Shown here in pieces: positions 1,170-58,281 of a DNA stretch of 64,000 bases (positions are counted from its first letter, which is position 1; every line of letters starts with the position of its first letter). Made by a program: the position numbers and the translations under genes. The notes beneath the pieces were generated by a model that was not told the origin of the DNA, ran no database searches, and worked only from the letters and a program-made list of their open reading frames with translations. The stretch spans positions 186,001-250,000 of the forward strand of contig NW_003314356.1 of assembly GCF_000143415.4 (NCBI RefSeq). The letters run 5' to 3'. This DNA comes from Selaginella moellendorffii (taxonomy: Eukaryota > Plantae > Lycopodiophyta).

Positions 1170-1403
1170 TGTGAGACACAAAATCCCTAGGCCCCAAAGT
1201 GGAGCCGGAAAGGGTGCCACGTGGTAGTGGCCGAAGCGAAAGCCAAACAAGCATGACACGTTTGGACTAAAAGCTCCGACTTGGAAGGTCAAGAGCAGGA
1301 GTGGAACTCCCAACAAAGTGCTCGAGGAGCAAGCACGAGGCAACCAATAAGCAAGGCTCCAAAAAGGGACCCAAAAAGGACCAACACATGACATGTGGAA
1401 GTG

Positions 1404-19211: not shown

Positions 19212-19280
19212 ATTATCTCATTATCTATTTCTTTGGAGATAAATAGAAGATAAATTTAACCTTGTATACAGTCAAAATTT

Positions 19281-22400: not shown

Positions 22401-23976
22401 TCAATTCCTTATAATTTAGTTTATAAAGTTTTTTTGTAGTGCTACTTTTTTCATTGAGCAATTTTTGTGAAGCTGAGGTAGAGCTCCATTCCTGAGAATT
22501 GTGCTTAAGAAATTTCATAGAAGGGTCACCAAATGAATCACCCAAGACAAAATGTGGAAGAAAAACAGAATTGGATTTTATCACCTTTGCAAATACCTAG
22601 ATAGACACATATCCTTGCTAGAGGAAGAGATCTAACATCAGTTGCATTGCCTGACACTAGATTCAAGAGCTTCCTTAGAATAGCTTGTGGTGGCAGGGAG
22701 CATAGAAACATAAGTTTGGCCCACAAAGGTCACCATTTCAATCTTATTATCAAATGGTCCTTTCTTAAAAATTCCTTTAGGAAATAATTTTTAAAATCTA
22801 TATTATATTTTGATAATTATATTATGCTATACTTTAAAAAATATTAAATATCATTATATTCTTCTTGTATATTGTAATATATCAGATCTAAGACTATTTT
22901 TTATTTATATGTTCTTTATAATTAAAGTATCAACAATCTAATTCAGAAAATGAAGAATTGGAGGGGATAAACATCAATAACAACACCTTATTCACAAATG
23001 ATAATCTTGATACAAAAATATATTATCTTAAAATAAAATAAAAATAATATAAATTTAACTATTATGTCATATTATATTCAGAAGATGTTATTACATTATA
23101 ATAGATATAGTACCATGAAAAAATATAATAATATTATTATATAAATAGTAATGTGCTAGATCTAAGCTTTTAATAAAATTATTGATATTTTTCATAATCT
23201 AAGTTTGTTTACATAATTGCTAAATAGTAAGTAGTTTTTAGTAGTCTTATAGTAATTTTATATTTAAATTATACATTTCTAAATTTTTAACTATATATGA
23301 ATTAAAATTCCGTGGCAAAAGCTCTATTTCGTTAAAGTGGGATTTATTCAGTAAAATGGGACTAGGTACAAATTTTCAAGTATTTGAAAATGACGTGAAA
23401 TTATATGTTTTTTGTCTAGGGGCTAGACATATCTGGGGCATGGTGACTAGCGCAGTGACTTTATGTCCAGACTAAGTCCATCTGGTTGTATAATAAATCT
23501 CATTGTCAAGGTGAACAAGCCGAATCTGAAGCTAAAGAAGAGTGATGGCATGTGCGCACACACTATTTATTTGTTCATTGAGCGTGTGGTGAGCTTTCCA
23601 AGATGAACGTCATTCCTATTAGCCAGACATATAACTTAATGGTGAGAACATTTAAATATTATTCAATGTTATCTTTTTCTAACAAATCTAATTGTGAAGG
23701 TGTAGCAAGAGGCATTGCTAGTCTGGAGAAGTCATTTAACTCATTTGACCCTTGAAATTTTCATGAAACTAAATAACATTCATATTATTAAGGAATTTCT
23801 TTAGTACCTTTTTTTTACGACATAGAGGCTTGCATTTCTTTCAAAGGTGATTTAGTAAAAGGCCTAAGGGCACATGCCATTCTATTTCTCAGACCGGTAT
23901 TAAGATATACTAGTGCAAAGGGAAAAAGGTATTTAGTGATCAAGTAAATGGCATGAGGGCACACGCCATTATAAGC

Positions 23977-24234
23977 CTAAGCGCTAGTGGACACCTCCTT
24001 TTTGGTACTCTCAGCGGTACTATCATCCTTCTCCGGGTCAGTTGTTTTGCTTTGGATTGTTGTCTCTGACGTTACTGGGGCGTTCTCGATAGTTGTTAAT
24101 GTTGCCGTTTGTTCAGAAAAATGATCACCTGGAGTATAGTACGGGGAGTTTGGAAGACTTATATATTCTACATCTTCACCTATCTCCTTCTCCGTCTCCT
24201 TTTCTGCCTCACTTACAGATTTTGTGCTTGCCAT
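23977..24234 (-). CDS. Small Ser/Thr/Glu-rich ORF inside the transposon, function unknown
   Basis: MASTKSVSEAEKETEKE...VSTSA; higher-GC patch between palindromes; no recognised domain. Confidence 0.25.
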   Translation of the reverse strand: MASTKSVSEAEKETEKEIGEDVEYISLPNSPYYTPGDHFSEQTATLTTIENAPVTSETTIQSKTTDPEKDDSTAESTKKEVSTSA

Positions 24235-24874
24235 GAGAACGCTCTTCACCCTAAAATATGGAGTTCGTTGTGTTATAAAAGGAAACCAACACACACGCTG
24301 CAAGGGAATGATGGTACATAAAGCACGTAAGCCCACAATATAGGTTTATGTGCCATTAATATGGGCCACACGCCATATTATTAGATTTATGCACGTGTGA
24401 TTGGTAAATGCATATGTCACATCATCTTTGTTTTACCTCACACACTATATTAGGCCTAATGAACCATATCACATGTGCGCACATGCTATATATATGGAGA
24501 AGTATTATGCAAGGATAGAAAAATTCAATGCATGATTGTGGAGAGCAATGGCATGAAGCCACATGCTAAATAACATTTTAGAGAAAGAATTAAAATAAAA
24601 ACATGCAAATAGTACTGAGTGGACCAAGACTTAGAAGTGCACAATTGAATGAGGTATTTCTAATAAATATTTCACTCACCTCATATAGGAATGGCTACCA
24701 CTCTCAAATGGCGTATCGCCTCATGCCATCACCTCGCAATTTGTTATAACAATCCGATGAATTCATATTCGGCTTGTTCACCTTGAACTTTAAGTAAGAT
24801 TTGCTAGAACAACTAAGAATTTATACTTGTTATTTGTATCATCTCACCTAGGAATGGCGTAAGGCCACATGCCA

Positions 24875-27800
24875 TCACGCCTCCTCTGATTCAGATTCGG
24901 ATTGTTCACCTTGAAATAAAATACATTAGAAACTTAGTAAAGGAATATTAATGAATCTCACCTTGAACCCGGGTTATGAATGCTCTTGCTGCATCTCTTG
25001 CATGGTCTGGCAAGGTGATGGTGGCACTCTGCTTCTGCATCCAACCATGCACAACATTATCCACCGATATGCTCATGCTGGGATCCCTTGGATTCAGCAC
25101 CCATCTCTTTTCTAGGCAATCCTTCGTATATCCAGAACTTGGCTTGAACCACTCCACAGTTACATTGAAGGAGTTAGTTTCCGCGTCCTCCTCTGCATCA
25201 CTGATGCAGCGCCCCACCCATATCATTTGTTTTTTATTACTGGGTCTGATAAGCACGACCATTCCTTTGCAGACCTGTACTGGATTGAATGCTGAATCCG
25301 GCTTCTTGTTCCTCGGCCCACAATAGTGATCCTCAACATCGTTATCTGTCACTGCATTTCCAGAGGACATTGTTCCGCTACTATCTGGTGCTCTGGGTTC
25401 TGGCCAAAAGGACTCTTCCAATTCTTCATATACAACCGGCCCATTTTGGATAGCAGATATAATCTTCTCCCAGTATTCGAGCAAAGGCTTGCACCTCTGA
25501 AAATAGGATTCTCCACCAAACACCAACCCCCTCTTCCAGAAGGCAATATGCTGTCTAATCCCGGCCACTATACTTTCCTGATCTTTGAGTCCATCCGGGT
25601 GCATTGGCCGTGGGGAACCCTAAGGAATCATAGGTTCCCCAGTTATGGGATCTCTCTTGAAGAGTTCAATGCCGTCCACTGGCAGCCACATTGTGTCCCA
25701 TTCTCTCATCTTGTACCTCATCACTGGAGCACCGTCACGCATGCTGAAATGAAACTGAAGAGGCTTGGAGTGGCCAATCAGCGTTTCAGATCCGTCCCTG
25801 ATGTAGCCTCTTACAAACCCCTTAAAGTCTGGAACCTCTGTCACAAGTGCAGCTTCAACAGTGCCTTTGATGCAATTTTGGAATTCATCGTAGAGTTGTG
25901 GGAGGGTGAGGACATTGGATCGCCGGAGGGACTCTGCCAGGTGACTGAACATGGCATCGACGTCTTCATAAGTCTGCCCAACCATGAGAAAGCCAAGTGT
26001 AACCGTTTCAAATATGCCTTTGGCAACAAGCATCGCCAAGTACGCGAAGATGTACATGTTTTTGTTCTCACTGCCAGCATTGTCTGTTTGGAGCAGAAGA
26101 TGGGGTGGAAGGCCACATCGGCCGCAAGAACTTCCTTGAGATTCTGCTTCGTTTGGATGAGGCTGTGCATTCACCGGGCGATCAGCCTCGTCGGAATGGC
26201 ATGAGGCCTCACGTGATAACCCTACAATCTGACGGCCAACATATTCACTGGGATGGCATGGGGCCCCACGCAATACTACAAGCCTTTGCTCCTCCTCCAG
26301 CTGAACCCTGTATGGGGTTCGATCGACAAGGGCCTTATGCAAGGGTTGGCCGTTCAGCTCAGTCTGCACACTTTGCAGAGACCTTAAGTGTTTTGCTAGG
26401 GACGCAATCATCATGTTTGCACCCCCGCCACCCCATAGAGGTACAAAGAAGTTCCCATAGTTCTGGGCACCATGCCCATGAGCGATTATGCCAAACAGAG
26501 ACACAGGCAGCTGCATGGATGAAGAGATTGCCTTGGGGGCAGGATTGAGTCGAGGTAAGCACGTCTTTTTCTGGTCCATTTTGTCGTGGATGATGCAGAG
26601 GTAAGAGTCAGGTCTCTCCATGGAGAGAATCCTGTTATGATAATATGCAGTCCTGCAGCTTCTCTGCTCGATGTTGTGGTCGAGCCGCCTTCTAACCAAC
26701 GTCTCTTGCTCTTGAGCGCTGCAAGAATTCTTCGACAAAGCCATTTTGATAGCAGTGCACTCGTCACACTTTGAAAAGCTGGAGTACTTTCCTATACTCA
26801 CATTCCTGAACTTGTTGCTCCACAATCTACTAAATTTAGATTGGCTCAGCTTCCTGTAGCCATTACTCTGGAGTTCCCGATTCACATCTTCCAATATGGC
26901 CCCCTTGGTATACATGGAAGGGAGAACTCGTTGGGTGTCTCGTGTTCCATCTTCCAAGAGGCGGGTTTTATGTGGTTGCTGCTCGCTACATGTCTCGACA
27001 AACCTCTTGAAGATTGCCTCTCCATATACAACATGACCCTTGGTTTTATGCGTACCGTCATTCCCATGGACTGCCTGTTGAACCCTTTGTTCCTCGAACT
27101 CAGTTTTGATTCTGTAGAATGTGGTTCGAGGGACTCCATAAATGATTCTCCATGCTTTCATGCAGACCAAACCCCTCTGGAAGACCATGCCCCCCACCTG
27201 ATGTTCTGAAGCATCAACAGATGACCGTAATGCCTCATACACAAAATTGCGAGCTGCCTTCCAGGACAATGTCTTGTATCTTGCTCTCTCCTCTTCAATA
27301 GCATCCCAATCAGCATGTTGACAGCACCTCCTCTTGCAACAAACAACTGTCGAGACCATTCGAACCTCCATCGCCATTTTCTGCCTTTTCGGTTCGTTGC
27401 TCAGATCCCTTTGGCTGCGCTTTAGGAAGGTGTACTTTCTTTTCCCATGAAGAGATGTTCTATCATCAGTTGTAGTGGTGTTTGATTGTGAATCCTTCAC
27501 ATTCTCAAACACTAAGTGCCTCAATTTCCACCACACAATGCTTCCAATAGTCAGACTGTTTTCTTCTGTGTCAACAACCTCTAAAATCGCAACTCCAATA
27601 TCATCCCAGCCCAATTCTTGATTAGCAACCGCATCTCTTGGATCGACAACTGTGGCTAAGCCCTCAGCTACCACCTCCCCCTCGGGGTTGTTTAGAAACA
27701 CCTTTGCCTGAATCCATGTAGCACGGTTCTTAAGATCCACGGAGGGAACATGCGTCGCACTTGCGCTGTCCCCAACATCTGCTTTCTTCTGAAGATTTTT

Positions 27801-28016
27801 CAAGGCAACAACAACATTTACCCCGACGACCATCTCTCCTCGTTCAATAGCGACCACATTCCCATCGAAGACAGTCTCTACTGATACAGCAGCATTGCCT
27901 TCCCCAAGCCTTTCACAGTGTATAACAAAGTTCCGATCCATAGACACAAGGGTCCCTTTTGCAACTCTCTTCCCACCATTCAAAATGTAAACCTTTTCCC
28001 CAACCCTGAAGGCCAT
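24875..28016 (-). pseudogene. Sola1/DUF7869-like DDD transposase (~1,030 aa), one in-frame stop in copy 1
   Basis: CCKRRC, VCMKAWRIIYGV, FSKCDEC, IIHDKMDQKK, LQTDNAGSENKN, FLMVG(Q/H)T(Y/H)EDVDAMFS. TAA at 25620-25622 is CAA in copy 2, so ORFs 25620-28016 and 24948-25604 are one frame. A predicted intron at 24910-24961 gives a C-terminus GEQSESESEEA*. Confidence 0.8.
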
Positions 28017-29272
28017 TCTGAAAGTGCAAAAAAGACGTTAAAACCATACAAAAAATGATTGGAGAATGGCCTAAATCATAACATACCAAACAACCTCAAT
28101 AGCATGAGGCCATATGCCATTATTCAAACATGCTATTGACACCCACGTGAAATTTCGCATTCACAAAATTGGCATGAGGCCTCATGCCATCTTGATATAC
28201 ACACAGCTGCAGGCAAGTAAAAACATACATGACAATACGCTAGCCATGAAATTGCAAGGGCCCAAGATGGCATGTGGCCTCATGCCATTTCTAAATGTGG
28301 TCCTAAGCCATTCCATGGTGAACATACCAGGAAGCACAAGTGCCGAATATCAAGAGGAAGCGGTAGCCACACCAAAGACAGTGCCGCTCGCAACACTGCA
28401 ACTGCTCGTAGCGCCGCTCGCACAAACTGCCACTCGCATAAACTGCCGCTCGCAATGGCGCTCGCAATGCCGCAACCGCTCGTAGACGCATAAACCACAG
28501 CTCACAACGCCGCTTACACAAGCAGCGCTCACTGCGCTCAGCGGAACCAAGAACACGGCGCACAAAAATGATAGACCTAGGAATGAGTTCGAGAATTCAA
28601 AAATAACACACGCTTGAACGTCACATCAAATCCTCTGACAAACCAGATCTTATGACTCCTCTGACAAATTTCAAACTGAGTAGCTTCTAGACTTTGCTGT
28701 CGGAGGTTGAACTTTGTCACATCATGTCCTTGCCTCGATCCAGCTGTGCCATGTCAGTGATTCGAACTTTGCCATGCCATGTCAGCGATCTGCGCCAAGA
28801 TTATTCGCCGTGTAAAGGAATAATTATGCTGTGTGTGTACGTCCATTTATGGCAATATAAGGCCACACGCCATTCAAAGAATAATGCTAGTCGAGCATTT
28901 TTTGGTGCATTTTTGGGTTCAAAATTGCATGAGCCCGCACGCTATAAAGTTTACCTGTACCAAAAATAGAAACAGCTTTATTTACTTGGGAATTTAAGTG
29001 GTTGAGGCATTTTTAAACTTACAAACACATGCCCTACTTTGGTTGCTTAAAATTCAAAAATATTATAAACCTTTCTTTTTGTATTTTCAATGTTTTCAAT
29101 TATGGTTTTTGATTTTCGCAGGACCAGCCTAGTAATCTATTTGCATCCCGTCATGTTTATAGCTAGCTTTCGTTTGTCCCCTTCGCTAGCCTGAAATACA
29201 TCTGCTCGGCATCTGCCTATTACAGCATTTGCCCAGAAAGGGCATCTTTCTTCACGCAGCATTTGCCACATG

Positions 29273-29298
29273 TTTAGGGTTTAGGGTTTAGGGTTTAG
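29273..29298 (+). promoter_or_regulatory. Short interstitial plant telomeric repeat (telo-box-like) in the spacer between the divergent genes
   Basis: (TTTAGGG)3 TTTAG; mirrored at ~59855-59880. Confidence 0.6.
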
Positions 29299-30389
29299 CA
29301 ATTCAGTAGCTTGATAAACATGCAAATACAGAACTTGATGCAAAATCCTTTGATATGTCACAATGCCCCTAGGACCATAAACACATTTCAATAGAGAGGG
29401 TCCTTTCATTTCATAACTCCTTACGTAGATCTTGGTGAAACCAGAGTTAGTGAAGTTAGTTTCTTGTGATCCCGCATCTGATTGTGATGTCCCTTTGCAG
29501 TGTCAATGGAAAGGTCAATGCACACCAAACTGTAAAATCTTGGAGCAAAATAACGGTCGGATCTATGGCAAATGCCCCTGAAACATTGTAAGGCTCGTGT
29601 GGTCTCATGTAGTGTCCGATCGAGATGCTTCTTTGCAGGGTCATCAAGTAAGACATTGTATACCATTCTGTTAAATCTAGTTGCGATCTAACGGTTGGAT
29701 CTCCAGAAAACTCAAAAAAATCTCGCACGTGTCAGAATATCCTAGGAATATACTCCTATGTGCCCCTGAAAATGGCATGCGGCCCCACGCCATTCAAGAG
29801 ATAACGCCAGATGACGCCGAGAATTTTTTGGTGCATTTTTTGGGTTCAAAATTGCATGAGCCCACACGCTATAAAGTTTATCTTTGCCAAATAGAGAAAA
29901 GTTTATCTGTGTCATGTGAGGTAGTTACAATCCTTTGTGCTCGGCATCTGCCTCTTGCAGCATTTGCACTGAAAGGGAATTTTTCTCCATTCAGCATTTG
30001 GCCCTGAAAATGGCATGCGCCCACACGCCATTCAAGGAATAATGCCACAGGACGCCTGGATTTTTGGGTTTAAAATGTTTAGGGTTTTTTGGGTTTTTTA
30101 AAAATATTTTGGGTCCAACGTTTTTTGGGTTTCTTTGGTTCAAAATTGCATGAGCCCACACGCTATAATATTGATTTGAGAGAAAAATAGAAACAGATAG
30201 AATTTCTTTATTTAGCTGAACATCTGCCATTTTTGGAAATACAAGATGCTTTGGAATATCCAATCATTTCAGCGCCACTCTCCAACTGTTAAGTGGCAGA
30301 GTAGCCTTGTTGCTACGATCCGCTGCACACACAGTGCACATTCGCCAGCGAGTCCGGCCTCGATTGTCACGGCCTCCATTCGGCTTCAA

Positions 30390-33300
30390 ATGGTAAGTCT
30401 TTTAGGCCAAGTAGAAAATGGCATGAGGCCACATGCCATTCAGTAGCAACATTGGCATGCACCGATTGGGCTCTTGAGTGCAGTCCGGTTACAGATGGCG
30501 TCTAGCCTCACGCCATCTTAGGATGCAGCCTCAAGACATCTGATGTAGTGGTGAATGGCGTGTGGCCTCACGTTATTTCCAGCTGCTAGCTTTTCATCTG
30601 TCAGTTCTAATTGTTGTGCATTTTTGAACAGGCGAGGAATTGCGTTCTTCTTCCAGCCACTGTCAATGTGGATGCAGAGAAGGGGGAGGAGCTCACCAGT
30701 TGGACTTTCGGGATGGAAGGCGAGGATCTGAGGCTGTACAACACAGATGGTGGGAGAAAAGAATGCATGGGGATCCTCATCCAAGTGACAGACACTCCAT
30801 GCAGTTCCATGCAAGAATATGGACTGGCACTTGTGGTAGAGACAGCGTCCGCCTTCAAGATCCACCTTGCACATCCTAACGGCTTCCCGGAGGGGGGTAG
30901 CAGCTATGAGGAATTCCTAGAGGGAGCTAAGGAGAGGTTGTCCAGGAGGCCCACAATTTCAAAGACGCTGCAGGTCTATGAAGATCACATGGAATCCACG
31001 GACCTCACCTACGGCGATGTTCAAAAACTATATTCCAACATTGAGCCGTTGAGAGTGCCTCCAGTTCGCGAAGCGAAGGGGAAGGGGGTCGATCTGGAAA
31101 CTACCCCGAAGCAGAAAAGGGTGGTCAAGCTCAAGCCGACGTTCGACTCTCTTGCTCCAAAAAAGAAGCTACTCGGTGATGCCATTGCCTCGGGTTCGAA
31201 CACTACACCCACCAAAAAGAAGAGCTGCAAAGAGCAGAAAAAGCAAGAAGAGGCAGCAAAAATCGTCACAGATAATAGTACTTGTTACTATTCCAACAAA
31301 GTATATACAATCGACGTGAGCCGTATCGACATCCAAAGCAAATACAGCCACAGGCTAGTACCTGATGAGTGGGTGGAGAAAATGAAGCAGAAGATGCTAG
31401 CAAGTCTAGTAACACCCGACATCGCAGACGTGATCCCCTACTACCGAACAATGAAGGGCGAGACGAGGTTTCCAGACTTGATCAATAGGAAGGTGTTGGA
31501 CGATCAGAACATCCGGTTCTATGCCGTCTCCAGGCAGCATTCTAGCTTGGCGATGCAAGAGATAGTTGTGGATATTATGGTGGGCGAGGAGGTGAAGAAA
31601 GTCTTCAAAACAAGAGTTGTCCGCCTGATAAAAGGCAACTCGCCCCTCCGATCTATCATATCCATCTCCCACGCACAGAATGTCAAGCAAGAAACATGCT
31701 ACAAATTGGGTCTGCACGAGACATTGGCATGAACACGGAAGCTCTGGGTTCAACTGAAGAAGCCACAAAAACCAGGACAAGGACTTGCACTAGCAACTAG
31801 CGCCTGGCAGGTAAGCCTCGTTGCATGTGGCATAGCATGTGGCCTCACACCATTTCCATTGCAGGAATTCTCGAGTCTTCTCTCGAAAACACTGGGGGTC
31901 AATGACACACTCAGCATCCATAACATTCTACTCACAACAAAAGTTGTTTTTGACAAATGGGTAGATGTGCGGAGGAGGTACCATGACGGGGAGTTGCTAA
32001 ACTCAATGGGTGTGGAGGACGGCCGGAAGCCCAATGATTTGAAGCTCAACGCCTTGCGTTTCTTGCGGTCTCAAGATGACGGCGACCTTCAGACAGTGGC
32101 TAATGCTCTTCTACGTGGTGAGGTAGTCTTCAACAAGACCAAAATGACTCCCGCCATATTGTGACATACGAGGACTTGTGCACGACTCTGAGAGCTCGTG
32201 TGCTATTGAAGGATTGGATCTTCGAGCAAGTGGCCGTGGAGAGGGTGAGCATCGACACCACGCAAGAGATGATGGAAGAGTTGGAGTTGTCAAATGAAGA
32301 CATCGACGACTACGTGAAGGGGGCCCCCAAGTTCATCGATCTGCTGCGGGATGCCACGAAAAGTAAAGCTGAGAAGTTGGATCAGTATCCAAATTTCATT
32401 AAGAGGGATGTCGACCGCCGGCTTCAGAAACAGCTCGACCCCGCAACAGAGGCCTATCGAGAACCTTACCGGGTATACGTGAATTCGGATGAGGATCAAA
32501 GGTGGAGGAGCATCGTTTCCCGCGGAGATGAGCAGGTCAAAAACATCTTTTGTGTGATGGACTTCACAAACGAGGAGATCACTCATGCAGACGAAGTCAG
32601 CTCCATCATTGACTTAATGGTGGGACTTGCGGAGGTGGAATCTTCAGTCCACTATATGATCTACGACTCCGAATCCTATCACAAGTTCTGGAAGGCCTTG
32701 AACGAGGTGAAGGCTCGGTTGAAAGGCAAGGAGATGCGGGAGATCCATGGGATAATGGCTAAGAAGAAGATACCGACGAATGTCCGCATCTTCACACTCG
32801 CCCTTGTTATTGGTCCTGCAGCAGAGTGGGACTGGAGTGACTTCCCAGCTTCGTTCGACAAGGCCGATCGAATTGATCTGAGGGAGGTCAATTTACCCGT
32901 GCCTGAGGAACTGAAGACGGCTATGGAGCTTTCGAATCCAGAGAAAGCTCCAGGTGCAGCATGGGAAATGCTCAGCTGGGTCTTCAACGCAATAGCACCT
33001 GCTTCCGACTCCAAGGGCAAATGCGTTGTCGAGTATAACTGCGGCGGACTATTCTTTCGAGCCGCACTACTCAAGGGTGTCCCGTGTGTTGCGGTGACAA
33101 ACTCCATTGAAGAGGTGACTTCAATGAAGCATATAATTACAGTTGCCAAAGAAAAACAGTATCTTCTCTGCGAACCTGGTGAGTACGCACTTTAAGTTTA
33201 AATGTTATCTCACAAGCTCTGTATGCAGGAGCGTGGCCACCCCCAGATGCTGAAACGGCGTTAACAGCTACTGTTGAAGATACCCATGTTAGGCCGAGCT

Positions 33301-35950
33301 CACAACCTGCACAAGGTAAGGTCACGTGAGGCCTCACACCATTTTGATTATAGATCGTTGTGAATATTCAGACACGAGGACTGAAAAGCGCACTGGTGGC
33401 GCGTCGAAGAAGGACAAACAGACAAGCAATAGGAAAAAAGGAGGTACAAATTATATTTGCAATGGCGTGTGGTCTCATGCCATTCCTTGCAGGAGACACT
33501 TCTTCAAAGGCAAAACAGGCAAGCACCAGCCAAGCTCAAACTGACAGTGGTCATAAAAAGTGAAAGCACGTTGGACAGTTGTCGGGATCAGAGGCGTTTA
33601 ATTCGAAAAGGAAGAAGGGCAACGAAAAGATGATAGGTAATGCCTCGTGGTCACCACCTCCTGACTCAGATTCCTATGGCAGACTCCCCTTCCCCAATCT
33701 CAATGGAAAGGTACAATGGATGAGGGATGCTTTTCAAGTCAGGGCCACGTTTTTCTCATCTCGTCGTCTTCGAAGGGTGCAAGAACGTGCAGAAACCATG
33801 TTAAGATAGTCGGGTGAGGATACGGTCCTAGGTCACGCACTAAAACAGGCTATGGATGTCTTGTATTTTGAGATGGAGACTCGGCCAGATGATTTTCCCA
33901 AGATGGTCCTAGAAGAACAAGCCATCCAGCCTGAGCAGCCTATGGAAGAAATGCAGGAGGGGGATGAGGAGCCAGAGAAAAATAATGAGCAGGAAGAGCA
34001 GAAGGACGAAGAGGAGGACAAAGAAGAGGAGGACGAAGAAGAGGAGGACGAAGAGGACTTGGATGGTCCTCACAATGGTGACAATCACAATAACGACGAC
34101 GACGATGATGACGACAATGGCCAGGCTGAGGTGGCCAAAGAGCAGCGGAGGAAGGTCATACAAGACAAACCATCAGGTAAATAATAGTACATCCATTCCT
34201 AACCTTTTACCATTTCTAACATTGTCCATGTAGGTTGCAAAGCAAATGGTAAGTAGAGATTATTCAGTTGAATTAAGATACAAATTCTAGCCTTTAGTGT
34301 CGAGGAAGGATAGTGCCAAGCAAGGGTTGAAACGTATGTCCAATCCTTCAGAATCAGCAGTGCGCCCAAGTGATATCGGTCCTAGTTCCTCAATAGCAGT
34401 TGATGGTAAATACAGTATAGTCGATTCAATGTGCTAATAAGTTTGTTTTTAGTAGCCAGTAGGGAGGATACCATCTGAATCGAAAGGAGATATTTGGACA
34501 TGCATATGGATCCGCCAATGGACTCTACTTGCCTGCAAGAGTCATCAGAGCTGGTGGAGGCTACTATCCATATCAACGCCAAGCAAGCTGACCACGCTCC
34601 ACTTGATGCTGCCCATACCACTGAGTCAATCTTGTCCACGTATCCAACTGACGGTGACCAGGCGCCATTGGACCCGCATGAGGCCGCCCCAGCCGCCGAG
34701 CCGGTCGTATCCTCATTTCCAACGGACTCAACGTGTGCCCAATTGTCTGACTACGTGCCGTTGGAACCTCCCTACACCGCCCTTGCTGCCTGTTCAGTCA
34801 TGTCCACTTTGCCAACAGAGGCATCAGCTGAAATGGCGTGTGATCACACGCCATCGGAACCACCCCATGCCACTGTTGAGCCAGTTGTACCAGAGTCTAC
34901 AGCTGAAATGGCATGTGCCCACATGCCATCGGATGCGATTGACCCCACATTGCAGAGGAGAGTATTTCCGCCCTTCACGTTTCCTCGACCAAAACCCTCT
35001 CAACGACCATCGGGAGCACCATTCGCTAATATTGTAGATGGTAAAATTGACTTGTACCATTTTTTATGCTGACGCATTTCATTTCAGAGTCACAGCGAAG
35101 GTACTGTATCATTTTTTATCTGAACGGTGTCCTTTTCTCCCATGAGCATGGCTCGTCCTCGAATGTCACTGCACCCTCCAAAGCTTGCAGTCGCAAGTTG
35201 GTCAAAAGAGACAGATTCACATTAATCACACGGGAGAAACTGCGGGATCTAATAATGACCATGCGACACTTAAAACAGAGGGCCGGGTTCAATTTGCAAT
35301 TGGGAGTTTGGACATCCATAATGCGCCACAATGCATTAACGTTGCTACAGATGATGCACGATCAGACGCGAGTAATATTACCATTTGACTTTCTCCTAAC
35401 GCAGGAGGATTGCTTGACTATGGTCCATGTGAGGGGTAGCAAGCCCATCTTCGTCAAGCCAGAGGCTGTAGTGATGAACCGGACTGCTAGGTCAAGTGAA
35501 ATCCTCATCATCGATGACTCGCCGATTAAAACTGCAGCGAACACGCACACATATGCAGTGCACCCCATCTCTTGCAGTATGGAAACTAGGGAGAAGAAAC
35601 CGTATGTTCTGGGGGACCTTGCAAAACGGCTTGGAGCGATGGTGATAGAGAACCGGCCAGTCCAGGAGGTGGCTGCAGAAATTAACCAAATGGCAGATGG
35701 AACGGTATATCAGAAGCCATTTGATCGGACAGACACCAGTCATCATTTATGGCATGTATATTGTCTAGCCAAGCACTATCCGCATCTCCATAATCTGCTC
35801 AACCGGATGGGTTCTTCGACCACTGAACATGAGCATGGACGTATTAGAGAAGAGATGGCATTACTATTGGGTTTAAATCCTGATAGTGTGGAGAGTGATG
35901 AAATTCCAAGATTATTGTATAGGCGTTGGAGGCAAAAAATAACAGTCTAA
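30390..35950 (+). pseudogene. 10-exon transposon accessory gene: ParB-like domain + degenerate N4/N6-MTase-like fold + acidic linker + FCP1/NIF HAD phosphatase-like domain (copy 1, disabled)
   Basis: Predicted GT-AG introns 30393-30631, 31811-31864, 33179-33228, 33316-33371, 33444-33492, 34177-34233, 34249-34297, 34406-34452, 35041-35087 all keep frame (~1,640 aa). Copy-1 lesions (stops near 31730, 33561, 33807, 34476; 1-bp deletion near 32153) are absent in copy 2. Confidence 0.8.
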
Positions 35951-36392
35951 GATGGCATGTATTTATTTAAAAATGTAACTTATTATGGCATGGGGTTCCA
36001 TGCCATTGTATTAATATTAAAATACAATTCTTTGAGAGGATTTGCATTATACTAGAAGTGTTACAGCATGTTATTGGAAGTCTACGAAGTTGTTTTATTA
36101 ATAAGGGGAAAGTAAAGATTGAATGGGGACTTGGGCTCCACCTAGACTCGGAGCAACTGAGCCAATATTAAAAGGATGGAAAGAAATTGGACGACGATGA
36201 CAAGGAGAAGAGAGAGGTGAAGCAGTGGCAGGGGGAGGAGAAGTGATTGAGTAGACATTTCCTTGTTTAAAATAAAATGGCATGTGCCTCAATGCAGTTG
36301 AATTTTGTTATATTTATATACTATATAAAGGTTTGGAAACCTTATTTTACAAGTGGGATAATGACAATTCCCACTTTAACGAAATAAAGCTT

Positions 36393-52261: not shown

Positions 52262-52703
52262 AAGCTCTATTTCGTTAAAGTAAGAATTGTCATTATCCCA
52301 CTTGTAAAATAAGGTTTCCAAACCTTTATATAGTATATAAATATAACAAAATTCAACTGCATTGAGGCACATGCCATTTTATTTTAAACAAGGAAATGTC
52401 TACTCAATCACTTCTCCTCCCCCTGCCACTGCTTCACCTCTCTCTTCTCCTTGTCATCGTCGTCCAATTTCTTTCCATCCTTTTAATATTGGCTTAGTTG
52501 CTCCGAGTCTAGGTGGAGCCCAAGTCCCCATTCAATCTTTACTTTCCCCTTATTAATAAAACAACTTCGTAGACTTCCAATAACATGCTGTAACACTTCT
52601 AGTATAATGCAAATCCTCTCAAAGAATTGTATTTTAATATTAATACAATGGCATGGAACCCCATGCCATAATAAGTTACATTTTTAAATAAATACATGCC
52701 ATC

Positions 52704-55700
52704 TCAGACTGTTATTTTTTGCCTCCAACGCCTATACAATAATCTTGGAATTTCATCACTCTCCACACTATCAGGATTTAAACCCAATAGTAATGCCATC
52801 TCTTCTCTAATACGTCCACGCTCATGTTTAGTGGTCGAAGAACCCATCCGGTTGAGCAGATTATGGAGATGCGGATAGTGCTTGGCTAGACAATATACAT
52901 GCCATAAATGATGACTGATGTCTGTCCGATCAAATGGCTTCTGATATACCGTTCCATCTGCCATTTGGTTGATTTCTGCAGCCACCTCCTGGACTGGCCG
53001 GTTCTCTATCACCATCGCTCCAAGCCGTTTTGCAAGGTCCCCCAGAACATACGGTTTCTTCTCCCTAGTTTCCATACTGCAAGAGATGGGGTGCACTGCA
53101 TATGTGTGCGTGTTCGCTGCAGTTTTAATCGGCGAGTCATCGATGATGAGGATTTCACTTGACCTAGCAGTCCGGTTCATCACTACAGCCTCTGGCTTGA
53201 CGAAGATGGGCTTGCTACCCCTCACATGGACCATAGTCAAGCAATCCTCCTGCGTTAGGAGAAAGTCAAATGGTAATATTACTCGCGTCTGATCGTGCAT
53301 CATCTGTAGCAACGTTAATGCATTGTGGCGCATCATGGATGTCCAAACTCCCAATTGCAAATTGAACCCGGCCCTCTGTTTTAAGTGTCGCATGGTCATT
53401 ATTAGATCCCGCAGTTTCTCCCGTGTGATTAATGTGAATCTGTCTCTTTTGACCAACTTGCGACCGCAGGCTTTGGAGGGTGCAGTGACATTCGAGGACG
53501 AGCCACGCTCATGGGAGAAAAGGACACCGTTCAGATCAAAAACGATACAGTACCTTCGCTGTGACTCTAAAATGAAATGCGTCAGCATAAAAAATGGTAC
53601 AAGTCAATTTTACCATCTACAATATTAGCGAATGGTGCTCCCGATGGTCGTTGAGAGGGTTTTGGTCGAGGAAACGTGAAGGGCAGAAATACTCTCCTCT
53701 GCAATGTGGGGTCAATCGCATCCGATGGCGTGTGGGCACATGCCATTTCAGTTGTAGACTCTGGTACAACTGGCTCAACAGTGGCATGGGGTGGTTCCGA
53801 TGGCGTGTGATCACACGCCATTTCAGCTGATGCCTCTGTTGGCAAAGTGGACATGACTGAACAGGCAGCAAGGGCGGTGTAGGGAGGTTCCAACGGCACG
53901 TAGTCAGACAATTGGGCACACGTTGAGTCCGTTGGAAATGAGGATACGACCGGCTCGGCGGCTGGGGCGGCCTCATGCGGGTCCAATGGCGCCTGGTCAC
54001 CGTCAGTTGGATACGTGGACAAGATTGACTCAGTGGTATGGGGAGCATCAAGTGGAGCATGGTCAGCTTGCTTGGCATTGATATGGATAGTAGCCTCCAC
54101 CAGCTCTGATGACTCTTGCAGGCAAGTAGAGTCCACTGGCGGATCCATATGCATGTCCAAATATCTCCCTTCGATTGAGATGGTATCCTCCCTACTGGCT
54201 ACTAAAAACAAACTCATTAGCACATTGAATCGACTATACTGTATTTACCATCAACTGCTATTGAGGAACTAGGACCGATATCACTTGGGCGCACTGCTGA
54301 TTCTGAAGGATTGGACATACGTTTCGACCCTTGCTTGGCACTATCCTTCCTCGACACTAAAGGCTAGAGTTTGTATCTTAATTCAACTGAATAATCTCTA
54401 CTTACCATTTGCTTTGCGACCTACATGGACAATGTTAAAAATGGTAAAAGGTTAGGAATGGATGTACTATTATTTACCTGATGGTTTGTCTTGTATGACC
54501 TTCCTCCGCTGCTCTTTGGCCACCTCAGGCTGGCCATCGTCGTCATCATCGTCGTCGTCGTTATTGTGATTGTCACCATTGTGAGGACCATCCAAGTCCT
54601 CTTCGTCCTCCTCTTCTTCGTCCTCCTCTTCTTTGTCCTCCTCTTCGTCCTTCTGCTCTTCCTGCTCATTATCTTTTTCTGGCTCCTCATCCCCCTCTTG
54701 CATTTCTTCCATAGGCTGCTCAGGCTGGATGGCTTGTTCTTCCAGGACCATCTTGGGAAAATCATCTGGCCGAGTCTCCATCTCAAAATACAAGACATCC
54801 ATAGCCTATTTTAGTGCGTGACCTAGGACCGTATCCTCACCCGACTGTCTTAACATGGTTTCTGCACGTTCTTGCACCCTTCGAAGACGACGAGATGAGA
54901 AAAATGTGGCCCTGACTTGAAAAGCATCCCTCATCCATTGTACCTCTCCATTGAGATTGGGGAAGGGGAGTCCGCCATAGGAATCTGAGTCAGGAGGTGG
55001 TGACCGCGAGGCATTACCTATCATCTTTTCGTTGCCCTTCTTCCTTTTCGAATCAAACGCCTCTGATCCCAACGACTGTCCAACGTGCTTTCGCTTTTTA
55101 TGACCACTGTCAGTTTGAGCTTGGCTGGTGCTTGCCTGTTTTGCCTTTGAAGAAGTGTCTCCTACAAGGAATGGCATGAGACCACACGCCATTGCAAATA
55201 TAATTTGTACCTCCTTTTTTCCTATTGCTTGTCTGTTTGTCCTTCTTCGACGCGCCACCAGTGCGCTTTTCAGTCCTCATGTCTGAATATTCACATCGAT
55301 CTATAATCAAAATGGCGTGAGGCCTCACGTGACCTTACCTTGTGCAGGTTGTGAGCTCGGCCCAACATGGGTATCTTCAACAGTAGCTGTTAACGCCGTT
55401 TCAGCATCTGGGGGTGGCCACGCTCCTGCATACAGAGCTTGTGAGATAACATTTAAACTTAAAGTGCGTACTCACCAGGTTCGCAGAGAAGATACTGTTT
55501 TTCTTTGGCAACTGTAATTATATGCTTCATTGAAGTTACCTCTTCAATGGAGTTTGTCACCGCAACACACGGGACACCCTTGAATAGTGCGGCTCGAAAG
55601 AATAGTCCGCCGCAGTTGTACTTGACAACGCATTTGCCCTTGGAGTCGGAAGCAGGTGCTATTGCGTTGAAGACCCAGCTGAGCATTTCCCATGCTGCAC

Positions 55701-58281
55701 CTAGAGCTTTCTCTGGATTCGAAAGCTCCATAGCCGTCTTCAGTTCCTCAGGCACGGGTAAATTGACCTCCCTCAGATCAATTCGATCGGCCTTGTCGAA
55801 CGAAGCTGGGAAGTCACTCCAGTCCCACTCTGCTGCAGGACCAATAACAAGGGCGAGTGTGAAGATGCGGACATTCGTCGGTATCTTCTTCTTAGCCATT
55901 ATCCCATGGATCTCCCGCATCTCCTTGCCTTTCAACCGAGCCTTCACCTCGTTCAAGGCCTTCCAGAACTTGTGATAGGATTTGGAGTCGTAGATCATAT
56001 AGTGGACTGAAGATTCCACCTCCGCAAGTCCCACCCTTAAGTCAATGATGGAGCTGACTTCATCTGCATGAGTGATCTCCTCGTTTGTGAAGTCCATCAC
56101 ACAAAAGATGTTTTTGACCTGCTCATCTCCGCGGGAAACGATGCTCCTCCACCTTTGATCCTCATCCGAATTCATGTATACCCGGTAAGGTTCTCGATAG
56201 GCCTTTGCTGCGGGGTCGAGCTGTTTCTGAAGCCAGCGGTCGACATCCCTCTTAATGAAATTTGGATACTGATCCAACTTCTCAGCTTTACTTTTCGTGG
56301 CATCCCGCAGCAGATCGATGAACTTGGGGGCCCCCTTCACGTAGTCGTCGATGTCTTCATTTGACAACTCCAGCTCTTCCATGTCTTCATTTGACAACTC
56401 CAGCTCTTGCGTGGTGTCGATGCTCACCCTCTCCATGGCCACTTGCTCGAAGATCCAATCCTTCAATAGCGCACGAGCTCTCAGAGTCATGCACAAGTCC
56501 TCGTATGTGACAATATGGCCGGGAGTCATTTTGGTCTTGTTGAAGACTACCTCACCACGTAGAAGAGCATTAGCCACTGTCAGAAGGTCGTCGTCGTCTA
56601 GAGACCGCGAGAAACGCAAGACGTTGAGCTTCAAATCATTGGGCTTTCGGCCGTCCTCCACACCCATTGAGTTTAGCAACTCCCCGTCATGGTAACTCCT
56701 CAGCACATCTACCCATTTGTCAAAAACAACTTTTGTCGCGAGTAGAATGTTATGGATGCTGAGTGTGTCATTGACCCCCAGTGTTTTCGAGAGAAGACTC
56801 GAGAATTCCTGCAATGGAAATGGCGTGAGGCCACATGCTATGCCACATGCAACGAGGCTTACCTGCCAGGCGCTAGTTGCTAGTGCACGTCCTTGTCCTA
56901 GTTTTTGTGGCTTCTTCAGTTGAACCCAGAGCTTCCGTGTTCGTGCCAATGTCTCGTGCAGACTCGATTTGTAGCATGTTTCTTGCTTGACATTCTGCGC
57001 GTGGGAAATGGATATGATAGATCGGAGGGGCGAGTTGCCTTTTATCAGGCGGACAACTCTTGTCTTGAAGACTTTCTTCACCTCCTTGCCCACCATAATA
57101 TCCACAACTATCTCTTGCATCGCCAAGCTAGAATGCTGCCCGGAGACGGCATAGAACCAAATGTTCTGATCGTCCAACACCTTCCTATTAATCAAGTCTG
57201 GAAACCTCGTCTCGCCCTTCATTGTTCGGTAGTAGGGGATCACGTCTGCGATGTCGGGTGTTACTAGACTTGGTAGCATCTTCTGCTTCATTTTCTCCAC
57301 CCACTCATCAGGTACTAGCCTGTGGCTGTATTTGCTTTGGATGTCGATACGGCTCACGTCGATTGTATATACTTTGTTGGAATAGTAACAAGTACTATTA
57401 TCTGCGACGATTTTTGCTGCCTCTTCTTGCTCTTTCTGCTCTTTGCGGCTCTTCTTTTTGGTGGGTGTAGTGTTCGAACCCGAGGCAATGGCATCACCGA
57501 GTAGCTTCTTTTTTGGAGCAAGAGAGTCGGACGTCGGCTTGAGCTTGACCACCCTTTTCTACTCGGGGTAGTTTCCAGATCGACCCCTTTCCCCTTCGCT
57601 TCGCGAACTGGAGGCACTCTCAACGGCTCAATGTTGGAATATAGTTTTTGAACATCGCCGTAGGTGAGGTCCGTGGATTCCATGTGATCTTCATAGACCC
57701 GCAGCGTCTTTGAAATTGTGGGCCTCTTGGACAACCTCTCCCTAGCTCTCTCTAGGAATTCCTCATAGCCGCTGCCCCCTCCAGGAAGCCGCTAGGATGT
57801 GCAAGGTGGATCTTGAAGGCGGACGCTATCTCTACCACAAGTGCCAGTCCATATTCTTGCATGGAACTGCATGGAGTGTCTGTCACTTGGATGAGGATCC
57901 CCATGCATTCTTTTCTCCCACCATCTGTGTTGTACAGCCTCAGATCCTCGCCTTCCATCCCGAAAGTCCAACTGGTGAGCTCCTCCCCCTTCTCTGCATC
58001 CACATTGACAGTGGCTGGAAGAAGAACACAATTCCTTGCCTGTTCAGAAATGCACAACAATTAGAGCTGACAGATGAAAAGCTAGCAGCTGGAAATAACG
58101 TGAGGCCACACGCCATTCACCACTGCATCAGATGTCTTGAGGCTGCATCCTAAGATGGCGTGAGGCTACACGCCATCTGTAACCGGACTGCACTCGAGAG
58201 CCCAATCGGTGCATGCCAATGTTGCTACTGAATGGCATGTGGCCTCATGCCATTTTCTACTTGGCCTAAAAGACTTACCAT
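52704..58281 (-). pseudogene. ParB-like/MTase-like/FCP1-like accessory gene, copy 2
   Basis: Same exon structure; keeps FYAVSGQHS and IVFDLNGVL. Lesions: 1-bp deletions near 57775 and 57563, TAG at 54806. Confidence 0.8.

What the first reader, a model, noticed from the sequence alone, without database searches (positions are those of the whole stretch)
30390..35950. Scattered ORFs splice into one ~1,640-aa multidomain protein
Seen: an ATG-only first exon, a 239-nt first intron and eight 47-57-nt GT-AG introns (one 15-nt microexon) link the separate ORFs in frame. The two copies have complementary lesions, so an intact ancestor can be reconstructed. The ORF track hides this gene. The domain order ParB-like, helical, MTase-like, acidic, HAD phosphatase-like is unusual cargo for a cut-and-paste transposon.
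Basis: partly seen in the sequence, partly recalled or inferred. Interest (0 to 1): 0.85.

Follow-up and report, generated by a model that had tools for sequence, protein, structure and literature searches.

The report
Spliced ParB–methylase–phosphatase gene of a plant transposon
The scattered reading frames do join into one gene of about 1,640 codons, but it is not chance cargo: it is the standing second gene of a plant DNA transposon family, similar to accessory genes recently reported in algal transposons, and both copies here are decaying.

Summary
Window 30390-35950 can be spliced through nine GT-AG introns (239 nt, then eight of 47-57 nt, with one 15-nt exon) into one frame of about 1,637 codons. 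A second, inverted copy (97.8% identical) carries different stops and frameshifts.

All five domain calls hold, at different strengths:
- ParB/sulfiredoxin fold: predicted structure only.
- Helical region.
- Relic of a beta-class N6/N4 DNA methylase: the family profile matches M.RsrI, but the catalytic DPPY motif is absent.
- Acidic linker.
- FCP1/NIF-type HAD domain: Pfam, above threshold in copy B.

The gene lies in a 13.1-kb element with 27-nt terminal inverted repeats. It runs divergently from a DUF7869-type DDE transposase gene.

The "unusual cargo" reading is not supported. Homologues with the same domain order sit next to homologues of the same transposase in the liverwort Riccia sorocarpa. 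ParB-plus-methylase accessory genes are already described in brown, red and green algal transposons.

The new points are the land-plant lineage, the lost methylase motif, the NIF fusion, and a 22-bp palindrome (16 copies per element) concentrated in the introns. Splicing is untested at RNA level; only intron 2 has comparative support. Function is inferred.

The parts
23319..36392 (+). Transposon copy A, about 13.07 kb, bounded by terminal inverted repeats
   Evidence: TIR pair found. The right end is defined by where copies A and B diverge. The left end is defined by where copy A and the third copy L006 diverge.
23319..23345 (+). Left terminal inverted repeat (27 nt, starts AAGCTC...)
   Evidence: pair I4, 93% complementary; L006 ends at the same base
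36366..36392 (+). Right terminal inverted repeat
   Evidence: similarity between copies A and B stops within 5 nt after it
24948..28016 (-). Transposase gene (ORFs 25620-28016 and 24948-25604, possibly further 3' exons). DUF7869-type DDE transposase.
   Evidence: Pfam PF25273 E=2.1e-39. Homologues of about 1,070 aa at 33-37% identity. Invariant D478, D645 and E684 columns in alignment A9.
28017..30389 (.). Region between the two divergent genes, rich in the 22-bp palindrome ATGGCATGnGGCCnCATGCCAT
   Evidence: copies at 28099, 28169, 28267, 29772, 30010
30390..30392 (+). Proposed exon 1 (ATG only), followed by donor GTAAGT
   Evidence: An upstream start is needed because the frame is open from 30611 with no ATG before 30713, while homology to the N-termini of relatives seems to begin upstream of that ATG (low-identity alignment). 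The choice of this particular ATG is inferred.
30632..31810 (+). Exon 2: N-terminal domain, basic linker (31109-31246) and ParB/Srx-like domain (about 31262-31810). The core motif FYAVS[G/R]QHSS is at 31517-31546.
   Evidence: Stop at 31730 in copy A only.
31811..31864 (+). Intron 2 (54 nt, phase 0), containing one palindrome copy
   Evidence: All homologues aligned across this point have a 14-19 residue gap exactly here. Palindrome at 31832.
31865..33178 (+). Exon 3: helical region, then the relic beta-class N6/N4 MTase domain. The motif-IV position (IFCVMDFTNE) is at 32545-32574 and the motif-I relic (VVEYNCGG) at 33025-33048.
   Evidence: 1-bp deletion at 32152 in copy A.
33229..33315 (+). 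Exon 4 (87 nt)
   Evidence: and hand frame check; no independent support
33372..33443 (+). Exon 5 (72 nt, or 90 nt if the acceptor at 33353 is used)
   Evidence: and hand frame check; no independent support
33493..34176 (+). Exon 6: basic then strongly acidic low-complexity linker (the D/E run is about 33966-34124)
   Evidence: Stops at 33561 and 33807 in copy A, and opposite 33846 in copy B.
34234..34248 (+). Exon 7, the 15-nt microexon (optional; skipping it keeps the frame)
   Evidence: unverifiable without RNA
34298..34405 (+). Exon 8
34453..35040 (+). Exon 9: Pro/Ala/Thr-rich region that carries two in-frame palindrome copies (34827-34853, 34902-34928)
   Evidence: Stop at 34476 in copy A only.
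35088..35950 (+). Exon 10: FCP1/NIF-type HAD domain. Motif I is at 35108-35137 (copy A FYLNG, copy B FDLNG). The DD motif ILIIDDSPIK is at 35501-35530.
   Evidence: Pfam NIF E=5.7e-6, 26.5 bits against a cut-off of 21.8, for copy B. Free-standing homologue P0041. Coordinates.
52262..64000 (-). Transposon copy B (inverted; its left end runs off the window). The accessory gene lies at 52704-58281.
58405..58883 (-). 479 bp present only in copy B, about 125 bp upstream of the accessory gene's ATG. It contains TATAAATA.

Best explanation
Window 30390-35950 holds the second, divergently transcribed gene of an autonomous-type DNA transposon with terminal inverted repeats (copy A 23319-36392; an inverted copy B at 52262-64000+). 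The element's transposase belongs to the DUF7869 DDE family.

Spliced from ten exons, the gene encodes a protein of about 1,637 aa. In order it has an N-terminal domain, a basic linker that looks like a nuclear localisation signal, a ParB/sulfiredoxin-fold domain (core motif SGQHS), a helical region, and a relic of a beta-class N6/N4 DNA methyltransferase. That relic keeps the motif-I region but not the catalytic (D/N/S)PP(Y/F/W) motif. An acidic low-complexity linker and an FCP1/NIF-type HAD domain with a DxN motif I complete the protein.

Shown:
- the in-frame gene model;
- the fold and family assignments;
- conservation of the domain order, and of its linkage to the transposase, in liverworts;
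- neutral decay of both window copies.

Inferred:
- The ParB-MTase core came from a bacterial or phage ParB-methylase fusion, which is a common architecture there.
- The protein now acts as the element's own DNA- or chromatin-directed accessory factor, like TnpA of CACTA elements or the ParB-type accessory proteins proposed for algal transposons.
- It may bind the element, possibly at the 22-bp palindromes, to help assemble the transposition complex or to alter the element's transcription or silencing.
- The NIF-like domain would act on, or merely bind, a phosphoprotein such as the RNA polymerase II tail.
For: Gene model. Introns 6, 8 and 9 carry branch-point-like CTAAC, CTAAT and CTGAC about 17-20 nt before the AG (read). 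Intron 2 is matched by a gap in every homologue aligned across that point.

Transposon: 27-nt TIRs, two copies, and a third, internally deleted copy from another data set that ends at the same terminus. Transposase Pfam DUF7869 E=2e-39, with conserved D/D/E columns.

Family: 15 remote homologues among 1.84 billion representatives. They come from Selaginella moellendorffii, Riccia sorocarpa, Calypogeia fissa and unnamed assemblies.

Collinear ParB-like, helical and MTase-like order: all three blocks at six loci (L001, L003, L004, L005, L007, L009); partial at L008 (no window-to-ParB hit) and L002 (helical only). NIF follows in P0023 and in L004 and L005.

Linkage: transposase homologues lie next to the accessory-gene homologue in Riccia L001 (E=9e-63) and L004 (E=4e-47, divergent as in the window).

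Domains:
- ParB: AF2 model with pLDDT 75. The top 46 Foldseek hits are all ParB/Noc/Srx/SbnI-type (best E=6.9e-4, prob 1.0).
- MTase: the family profile matches M.RsrI at E=2.8e-7 and MboIIA at 0.037. PF01555 is hit in 5 of 10 members, in P0023 and in L009.
- NIF: copy B is above the Pfam gathering score.

Precedent: ParB plus MTase accessory genes, with inverted-repeat arrays, in algal transposons.
Against: - No RNA evidence. Only one of nine introns has comparative support. Exons 4, 5 and 7 and the ATG-only exon are conjectural.
- Both window copies are broken and have diverged neutrally (nonsynonymous:synonymous 73:24), so nothing here is functional now.
- ParB-like rests on a predicted structure with modest Foldseek scores (TM 0.3-0.4). 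Pfam ParBc and a profile search of PDB sequences found nothing.
- The window's own MTase-like stretch lacks the segment that aligns to the HPxxKP motif of M.RsrI, and its structure model was poor and uninformative.
- Two DUF7869 loci with no detectable accessory gene (L011, L012) also carry palindrome arrays. The palindromes may therefore be transposase sites rather than sites for the ParB-like protein.
- No target-site duplication was found.
Confidence: 0.72

Rival explanations
1. Captured host gene (true cargo): the transposon picked up a cellular gene or gene fragments, as Pack-MULEs do. On this reading the multidomain protein has nothing to do with transposition.
For: The NIF-like exon has a free-standing 215-aa cellular relative with the same DxNGVLF and LLTQEDCL motifs in a gene-dense eukaryote (P0041/L010). 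S. moellendorffii has a 451-aa relative in an ordinary gene neighbourhood. Two DUF7869 loci lack the gene.
Against: The ParB-like / helical / MTase-like / NIF order recurs beside the same transposase family in Riccia at only 25-33% identity. That points to long-term co-inheritance with the element. The family was found almost only as repeated copies or metagenome fragments, with no widely conserved host orthologue.
Confidence: 0.1
2. There are two or more separate transcription units: a ParB/MTase-like gene ending in the low-complexity region, and an independent NIF-domain gene starting at the ATG at 35066.
For: The last exon has its own in-frame ATG (ORF 35066-35950). The linking exons 4-9 are short or low-complexity and unsupported by homology. 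Annotators split the Riccia L004 gene in two. The window's NIF domain and the Riccia NIF domains are not significantly similar to each other.
Against: All junctions keep one frame, with uniform phase-1 introns and good donor, branch and acceptor signals. The ATG at 35066 lies inside a 47-nt GT...AG interval with a CTGAC branch signal. Two independent Riccia gene models join MTase-like and NIF in one product (P0023; the L004 702-aa gene). Calypogeia has the same order on one strand.
Confidence: 0.14
3. The protein is an active DNA N6-adenine or N4-cytosine methyltransferase that marks the element's own DNA, guided by the ParB-like domain, as proposed for the algal accessory proteins.
For: Homology to beta-class DNA methylases. 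A motif-I-like GG is kept in all members. This reading has precedent in the literature.
Against: No family member keeps the (D/N/S)PP(Y/F/W) motif at the aligned position; they have DLTHP, DLTSSP, DSANG, DLRRC or DFTNE instead. The window and Selaginella copies also lack the segment aligned to HPxxKP. No member reaches the Pfam gathering score.
Confidence: 0.08
4. The joined frame is an artefact: unrelated ORFs in a decayed repeat that happen to be linkable by GT-AG pairs.
For: Short GT...AG intervals are frequent. Several small exons are unsupported.
Against: There are five open stretches of 196-438 codons on one strand. Three of them have independent family or fold assignments, in the same order as in distant homologues.
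Confidence: 0.01

Closest known systems
ParB-like + DNA methyltransferase accessory gene of Sola1-1_Ec32 (Ectocarpus, brown alga; Dinatale et al. 2025, PMC12477816)
   Same: A large protein (1,104 aa there) with an N-terminal ParB-like domain and an N6/N4-type DNA methylase domain. It is encoded inside a large DNA transposon on the strand opposite the transposase.
   Different: Here the host is a land plant. The methylase motif IV is lost, a C-terminal NIF/FCP1 HAD domain is added, and the gene has many short introns. Direct sequence homology to the Ectocarpus protein, and whether the DUF7869 transposase is a Sola1 transposase, were not tested because no sequences were at hand.
Plavaka accessory genes PAG2 (N6-adenine methylase + SET) and PAG3 (ParB-like + 2OG oxygenase) of red algae (Petroll et al. 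2025, bioRxiv 10.1101/2025.02.11.637652)
   Same: ParB-like and PF01555-type domains are carried by DNA transposons. Arrays of inverted repeats lie within the elements and are proposed as binding sites. The ParB call there also rests on weak structural or profile hits (7BNR, E=0.29).
   Different: There the ParB and methylase domains sit in two proteins with other partners (SET, 2OG), and the transposase is Plavaka/EnSpm. Here there is one protein with a NIF partner and a DUF7869 transposase.
Bacterial and phage ParB-domain DNA methylases (ParBc + N6_N4_Mtase fusions; beta-class enzymes such as M.RsrI, PDB 1eg2)
   Same: The same domain order, ParB/Srx fold then beta-class methylase with motif I near the C-terminus. 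The family profile aligns to M.RsrI residues 208-270.
   Different: The catalytic DPPY is absent. The ParB core motif is SGQHS rather than GERRxR or DGxHR. This is a eukaryotic, intron-containing gene with extra domains. That the fusion is common in prokaryotes comes from general knowledge and was not tested here.
TnpA of En/Spm (CACTA) elements and other second ORFs of plant DNA transposons
   Same: It is a second element-encoded protein alongside the transposase, and short repeated motifs are spread through the element as likely binding sites.
   Different: There is no sequence relationship. The motifs here are 22-bp palindromes found throughout the element, including in introns, not only near the ends.
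FCP1/SCP/NIF family of HAD phosphatases (PF03031)
   Same: The Pfam match is above threshold. The motif-I nucleophile Asp (copy B) and the hhhDDxP motif are present.
   Different: The second acidic residue of DxDx(T/V) is Asn here, Asn in Calypogeia and Glu in one Riccia copy. Catalysis is therefore doubtful.

Membership tests
ParB/sulfiredoxin (ParB/Srx) fold | Characteristic alpha/beta core, with a Gly-x-x-(R/H) motif at the junction of a strand and a helix | tested here: met
   AF2 model of B residues (window 56863-57420, 19-sequence alignment): pLDDT 75.2, pTM 0.66. Foldseek against the PDB: ranks 1-46 are all ParB, Noc, PadC, KorB, Srx, SbnI or Atu1540 (best E=6.9e-4, prob 1.0, TM 0.3-0.4). 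Strand 87-93, G94, helix 95-106 places SGQHS at the canonical position.
ParB/sulfiredoxin (ParB/Srx) fold | Sequence match to Pfam ParBc (PF02195), or to ParB/Srx sequences in the PDB | tested here: not met
   No Pfam hit at E<=1 for the window pieces or for any of 19 family members. A profile search of PDB sequences found no ParB.
ParB/sulfiredoxin (ParB/Srx) fold | CTP-binding GERRxR box, or nuclease/Srx-type G(C/H)HR | tested here: not met
   The family motif is (A/V)(I/V)SGQHS; Q and H are invariant and the final Arg is replaced by Ser. Copy A has R for the conserved G.
Beta-class N6/N4 DNA methyltransferase (PF01555) | C-terminal motif-I region (hPxxKP ... hLDxFxGxG) homologous to known enzymes | tested here: met
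   At family level, profile A5 matches M.RsrI (1eg2) at E=2.8e-7 over residues 208-270 and MboIIA at 0.037. PF01555 is hit by 5 of 10 members (best 5.4e-5). The window's own copy keeps only ...VVEYNCGG... and lacks about 19 residues around the KP motif.
Beta-class N6/N4 DNA methyltransferase (PF01555) | Catalytic motif IV (D/N/S)PP(Y/F/W) | tested here: not met
   At the aligned position the members have DLTHP, DVTHP, DLTSSP, DSANG or DLRRC; the window has MDFTNE (alignment A4).
Beta-class N6/N4 DNA methyltransferase (PF01555) | Pfam gathering score (26.7 bits) | tested here: not met
   Best whole-protein scores are 20.3 bits (P0023) and 21.6 bits (L009 piece). There was no hit for the window pieces.
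FCP1/NIF-like HAD phosphatase (PF03031) | Pfam gathering score (21.8 bits) | tested here: met
   Copy B last exon: 26.5 bits, E=5.7e-6, residues 13-161 on profile 1-126. Copy A gave no hit; it has Tyr in place of the motif-I Asp.
FCP1/NIF-like HAD phosphatase (PF03031) | Motif I DxDx(T/V), with both catalytic aspartates | tested here: not met
   Copy B has FDLNGVL (Asp then Asn) and copy A has FYLNGVL. P0041 has FDMNGVL. Calypogeia has LDLNK and Riccia has LDVEG.
Cut-and-paste (TIR) DNA transposon | Terminal inverted repeats bounding the repeated unit | tested here: met
   27-nt TIRs, 25/27 complementary. The ends agree among copy A, copy B and L006.
Cut-and-paste (TIR) DNA transposon | Element-encoded DDE-type transposase | tested here: met
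   PF25273 E=2.1e-39. Invariant IIHDKMDQKKT, LQxDNxxxENKN and GHTHEDID blocks. Their catalytic role is inferred. The superfamily could not be assigned: no PDB or named hit.
Cut-and-paste (TIR) DNA transposon | Target-site duplication | tested here: inconclusive
   The flanks of copy A show no direct repeat (...GTGGCAA | element | ATTCACA...). The left end of copy B is off the window and no empty site is present in the window.
ParB-type accessory proteins of algal DNA transposons | A ParB-like domain joined to a DNA/chromatin-modifying domain, encoded inside a transposase-bearing element that also carries inverted-repeat arrays | tested here: met
   Architecture and location. Palindrome arrays. 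Literature descriptions.
ParB-type accessory proteins of algal DNA transposons | Direct sequence homology to the published algal proteins | not tested

The most novel reading that the evidence does not exclude
DUF7869 transposons of land plants may carry a self-recognition module of prokaryotic origin. On this reading, the ParB-like protein binds the element's own lineage-specific 20-25-bp palindromes, much as ParB binds parS, and spreads over the element. These sites have colonised even the element's introns and partly supply splice signals. The NIF-like domain would then act on the RNA polymerase II (or IV/V) tail or on chromatin phosphoproteins, so that the transposon controls its own transcription or escapes silencing.
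Probability: 0.15. Interest if true: 0.8.

Novelty: new variant of a known kind. Interest (0 to 1): 0.55.

Why it matters
Transposon accessory genes that may bind and modify their own element are rare and have so far been described mainly in algae. This finding extends that class to land plants: a lycophyte-like source here, plus liverworts.

It ties the class to an unnamed transposase family (DUF7869) and shows a version in which the methylase chemistry seems to have been given up. A CTD-phosphatase-like domain has been added in its place.

It also offers a concrete and testable cis element, the 22-bp palindrome, that could be the binding site. In practical terms, ORF-based annotation misses this gene entirely. 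That probably explains why only fragments of the family appear in protein databases.

Tried and rejected
- Direct Pfam and NCBIfam scans of the window ORFs found nothing for any piece of copy A. Only copy B's last exon hits NIF.
- A word-based homologue search with the 344-aa MTase-like ORF found nothing. With the NIF exon it found one protein.
- Profile searches of PDB sequences found nothing useful for the ParB-like region, the helical region or the transposase.
- The AF2 model of the helical plus MTase-like region was poor over the MTase part (pLDDT about 45-60). Its Foldseek hits (LarE, OMP decarboxylase, DnaB) are generic and were discarded.
- I tested whether the N-terminal domains of the transposase and of the accessory protein are related. 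They are not (hhalign E=0.9).
- I tested whether the window's NIF domain and the liverwort NIF domains are directly alignable. The alignment is in register but not significant (E=0.58; hhalign E=0.08). Common origin or separate acquisition therefore stays open.
- I looked for a target-site duplication and for an empty site and found neither.
- I tried to name the transposase superfamily from source names and from the literature. There are no names and no papers on DUF7869/PF25273.
- The A/B comparison cannot show selection, because the substitutions are neutral.
- I did not build a consensus or "ancestral" version of the gene. It was not needed, and the searches were done on unaltered pieces.

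Full report
**What is at the coordinates.**
The window looks eukaryotic: GT-AG mini-introns, CpG depletion and a Ty3/gypsy integrase ORF next door. A self-comparison shows that A 25152-36397 is repeated in inverted orientation at B 64000-52257 with 97.8% identity. The finding (30390-35950) lies in the right half of copy A. Its counterpart in copy B is 58281-52704 on the minus strand.

**Gene model.**
I rebuilt the model from the sequence. Ten exons are joined by nine GT...AG introns of 239, 54, 50, 56 (or 38), 49, 57, 49 (or 42), 47 and 47 nt.
- Intron 2 is phase 0; introns 3-9 are all phase 1.
- With the lesions of each copy set aside, the frame runs from 30390 to the TAA at 35948-35950, about 1,637 codons.
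- Introns 6, 8 and 9 have CTAAC, CTAAT and CTGAC about 17-20 nt before the AG (read).

Independent support exists for intron 2 only. The six homologues that span this point all have a 14-19 residue gap exactly where the 54 nt would be translated. In copy B those 54 nt are read through in frame, giving a 697-aa ORF.

An upstream start exon of some kind is needed. The frame is open from 30611 but has no ATG before 30713, and similarity to the N-termini of relatives seems to begin before that ATG, although that alignment is poor (11-19% identity). Which ATG is used is conjecture. Exons 4, 5 and 7 are multiples of three between phase-1 introns, so they could be skipped without any visible effect.

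**Lesions.**
The alignment of the two copies and the translations give the following.
- Copy A has stops at 31730, 33561, 33807 and 34476 and a 1-bp deletion at 32152. It also has substitutions at conserved residues: R for the near-invariant G of SGQHS, and Y for the motif-I Asp of the NIF domain.
- Copy B has 1-bp deletions opposite A 30892 and 31109, a stop opposite A 33846, and an in-frame 18-bp duplication.

Substitutions between the copies are neutral. They fall 42/30/26 on codon positions 1/2/3, the nonsynonymous:synonymous ratio is 73:24, and exons are no more conserved than introns. They are dominated by transitions, many at CpG. Both copies are therefore dead and decaying.

**The element.**
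A 27-nt terminal inverted repeat pair (23319-23345 and 36366-36392, 25/27) bounds copy A. Similarity between A and B ends within 5 nt of the right repeat.

A third copy, L006, comes from a Logan assembly of run ERR10900155 and is 97% identical. It is an internal-deletion derivative that ends at the same left terminus. No target-site duplication or empty site could be found.

On the minus strand, diverging from the finding's gene, is a transposase gene (ORFs 25620-28016 and 24948-25604). It hits Pfam DUF7869 at E=2e-39 and has relatives of about 1,070 aa at 33-37% identity. These share invariant IIHDKMDQKKT, LQxDNxxxENKN and GHTHEDID blocks, which is a DDE-like triad. Copy A has GQTYEDVD in the last block. 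The superfamily could not be named.

**Relatives of the gene.**
An exhaustive HMMER search with the 697-aa ORF of copy B found only 15 weak hits (best E=1.3e-9). They come from Selaginella moellendorffii, the liverworts Riccia sorocarpa and Calypogeia fissa, and unnamed metagenome or Logan contigs.

Mapping them back shows collinear ParB-like, helical and MTase-like blocks at six loci (L001, L003-L005, L007, L009). L008 and the Selaginella locus L002 match only in part. A NIF domain follows in Riccia P0023 (1,064 aa), in the 702-aa gene of Riccia L004, and in Calypogeia L005.

In Riccia, homologues of the window's transposase lie next to the gene. In L001 the match is E=9e-63 on the same strand; in L004 it is E=4e-47, divergent as in the window. 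Two other DUF7869 loci of unknown origin (L011, L012) have no detectable copy of the gene.

**Domains.**
- *ParB-like.* The family shares IPVxxI..PP..R..N, PQxADLxP and FxAISGQHSxxA. Sequence methods do not see ParB. An AlphaFold2 model (pLDDT 75) gives Foldseek hits that are ParB, Noc, PadC, KorB, sulfiredoxin or SbnI from rank 1 to 46 (best E=6.9e-4).
- *Helical region.* It is confidently helical but has no informative match.
- *MTase-like.* A profile of the conserved block APxW...K...TVLDFFSGG...AL matches the beta-class adenine methylase M.RsrI at E=2.8e-7, over its HPTQKP...LDFFAGSG segment. PF01555 is hit weakly but repeatedly. No member keeps a DPPY-type motif IV. The window and Selaginella versions (VVEYNCGG, IVEYGCGG) have also lost the KP segment.
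- *Acidic linker.* It is plain in the sequence (about 33966-34124).
- *HAD-like.* Copy B's last exon passes the Pfam NIF threshold (26.5 against 21.8 bits). Motif I is FDLNGVL, so the nucleophile Asp is present but the second Asp is Asn. ILIIDDSP is kept. A free-standing 215-aa cellular relative shares these motifs. Liverwort copies have DxN or DxE.

**Comparison with what is known.**
The Ectocarpus transposon Sola1-1_Ec32 carries a 1,104-aa ParB-like plus N4/N6 methylase gene on the strand opposite its transposase. [quoted passage not shown]

Red-algal Plavaka elements carry PAG2 (PF01555 + SET) and PAG3 (ParB-like + 2OG oxygenase), next to arrays of inverted repeats. The present gene belongs to this emerging class. 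It differs in four ways:
- the host lineage is land plants;
- the transposase family is DUF7869;
- the catalytic methylase motif is lost;
- a NIF domain is fused at the C-terminus.

I found no paper describing it in land plants, but the search library is incomplete.

**Mechanism.**
What is shown is the architecture and its linkage to the transposase. The inference is that the gene is a standing accessory factor of the transposon rather than cargo. It would descend from a prokaryotic ParB-methylase fusion and now act by binding rather than by methylation, with a phosphatase or phospho-binding domain as effector.

The 22-bp palindrome ATGGCATGnGGCCnCATGCCAT is the obvious candidate site. There are 29 matches in the window against 0.01 expected, and 16 per element. 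Related loci each have their own 20-25-bp palindrome in many copies. However, the transposase-only loci have such palindromes too, so the binder may be the transposase.

**Verdict.**
This is a new variant of a known kind and of moderate interest.

Noticed in passing
window 23319-36392 (copies at 23948, 24548, 24708, 24854, 26196, 26253, 28099, 28169, 28267, 29772, 30010, 30418, 31832, 33462, 34908, 35985; weaker ones at 30552, 33318, 34832): A 22-bp palindrome, ATGGCATGnGGCCnCATGCCAT, occurs 16 times per element (29 in the window against 0.01 expected). Of the seven copies inside the accessory gene, five lie in introns 1, 2, 4 and 5 (648 nt) and two lie in frame in exon 9 (out of 4.9 kb of exon). 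The extended unit often ends in ...CCATTCAG or ...TTGCAG, so it can supply an acceptor-like site.
   Followed up: partly
L003, L004 (Riccia), L005 (Calypogeia), L007, L011, L012: Every related DUF7869 locus examined has its own palindrome of roughly 10-25 bp in many copies. Riccia has TTCGGGACGCGTCCCGAA (27 copies in L004, including between exons). L007 has CAACGC[C/G]GCGTTG in a 26-nt tandem array. L011 has CTAGATCAGACyTAGTCTGATCTAG and L012 has GTTATCGTCGrsyCGACGATAAC. The sequence differs by lineage while the pattern is shared, as expected for co-evolving protein-binding sites.
   Followed up: partly
window 58405-58883 (copy B only): A 479-bp GC-rich segment containing TATAAATA sits about 125 bp upstream of the accessory gene's ATG in copy B and is absent from copy A (junction at A 30266/30267). 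It is either an insertion in B or a deletion of promoter or 5' exon sequence in A.
   Followed up: no
L002 (Selaginella moellendorffii GL377575.1; P0001 = D8RBM5 / LOC9650508): A 451-aa Selaginella protein corresponds to the helical plus MTase-like part only. It sits among ordinary genes (ArfGap, VQ), with a second near-identical locus. It may be a domesticated or relic copy.
   Followed up: no
L010 (Logan SRR29293673), gene 2146-2793 (P0041): This is a free-standing 215-aa NIF-like protein with the same FDxNGVLF, MMRHNA, LLTQEDCL and DDSP motifs as the window's last exon. It lies in a very gene-dense, intron-poor eukaryotic contig. It is a possible cellular source of the domain.
   Followed up: no
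window 25620-28016 (-), residues about 679-686: Copy A's transposase reads GQTYEDVD where the aligned relatives read GHTHEDID (E and both D invariant, both H and the I nearly so). Copy B's transposase frame is broken into several ORFs. Neither copy is likely to be autonomous now.
   Followed up: partly
window 36758-37672 (+): A Ty3/gypsy-type integrase ORF (Pfam rve, E=6e-12) starts 366 bp beyond the right end of copy A, in AT-rich DNA. The transposon sits in a repeat-rich neighbourhood.
   Followed up: no
window 1-2288, 8729-10353, 17200-19212, 49718-50503: Another repeat family, unrelated to the finding, occurs in four or more partial copies at 75-98% identity with internal short tandem repeats.
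   Followed up: no
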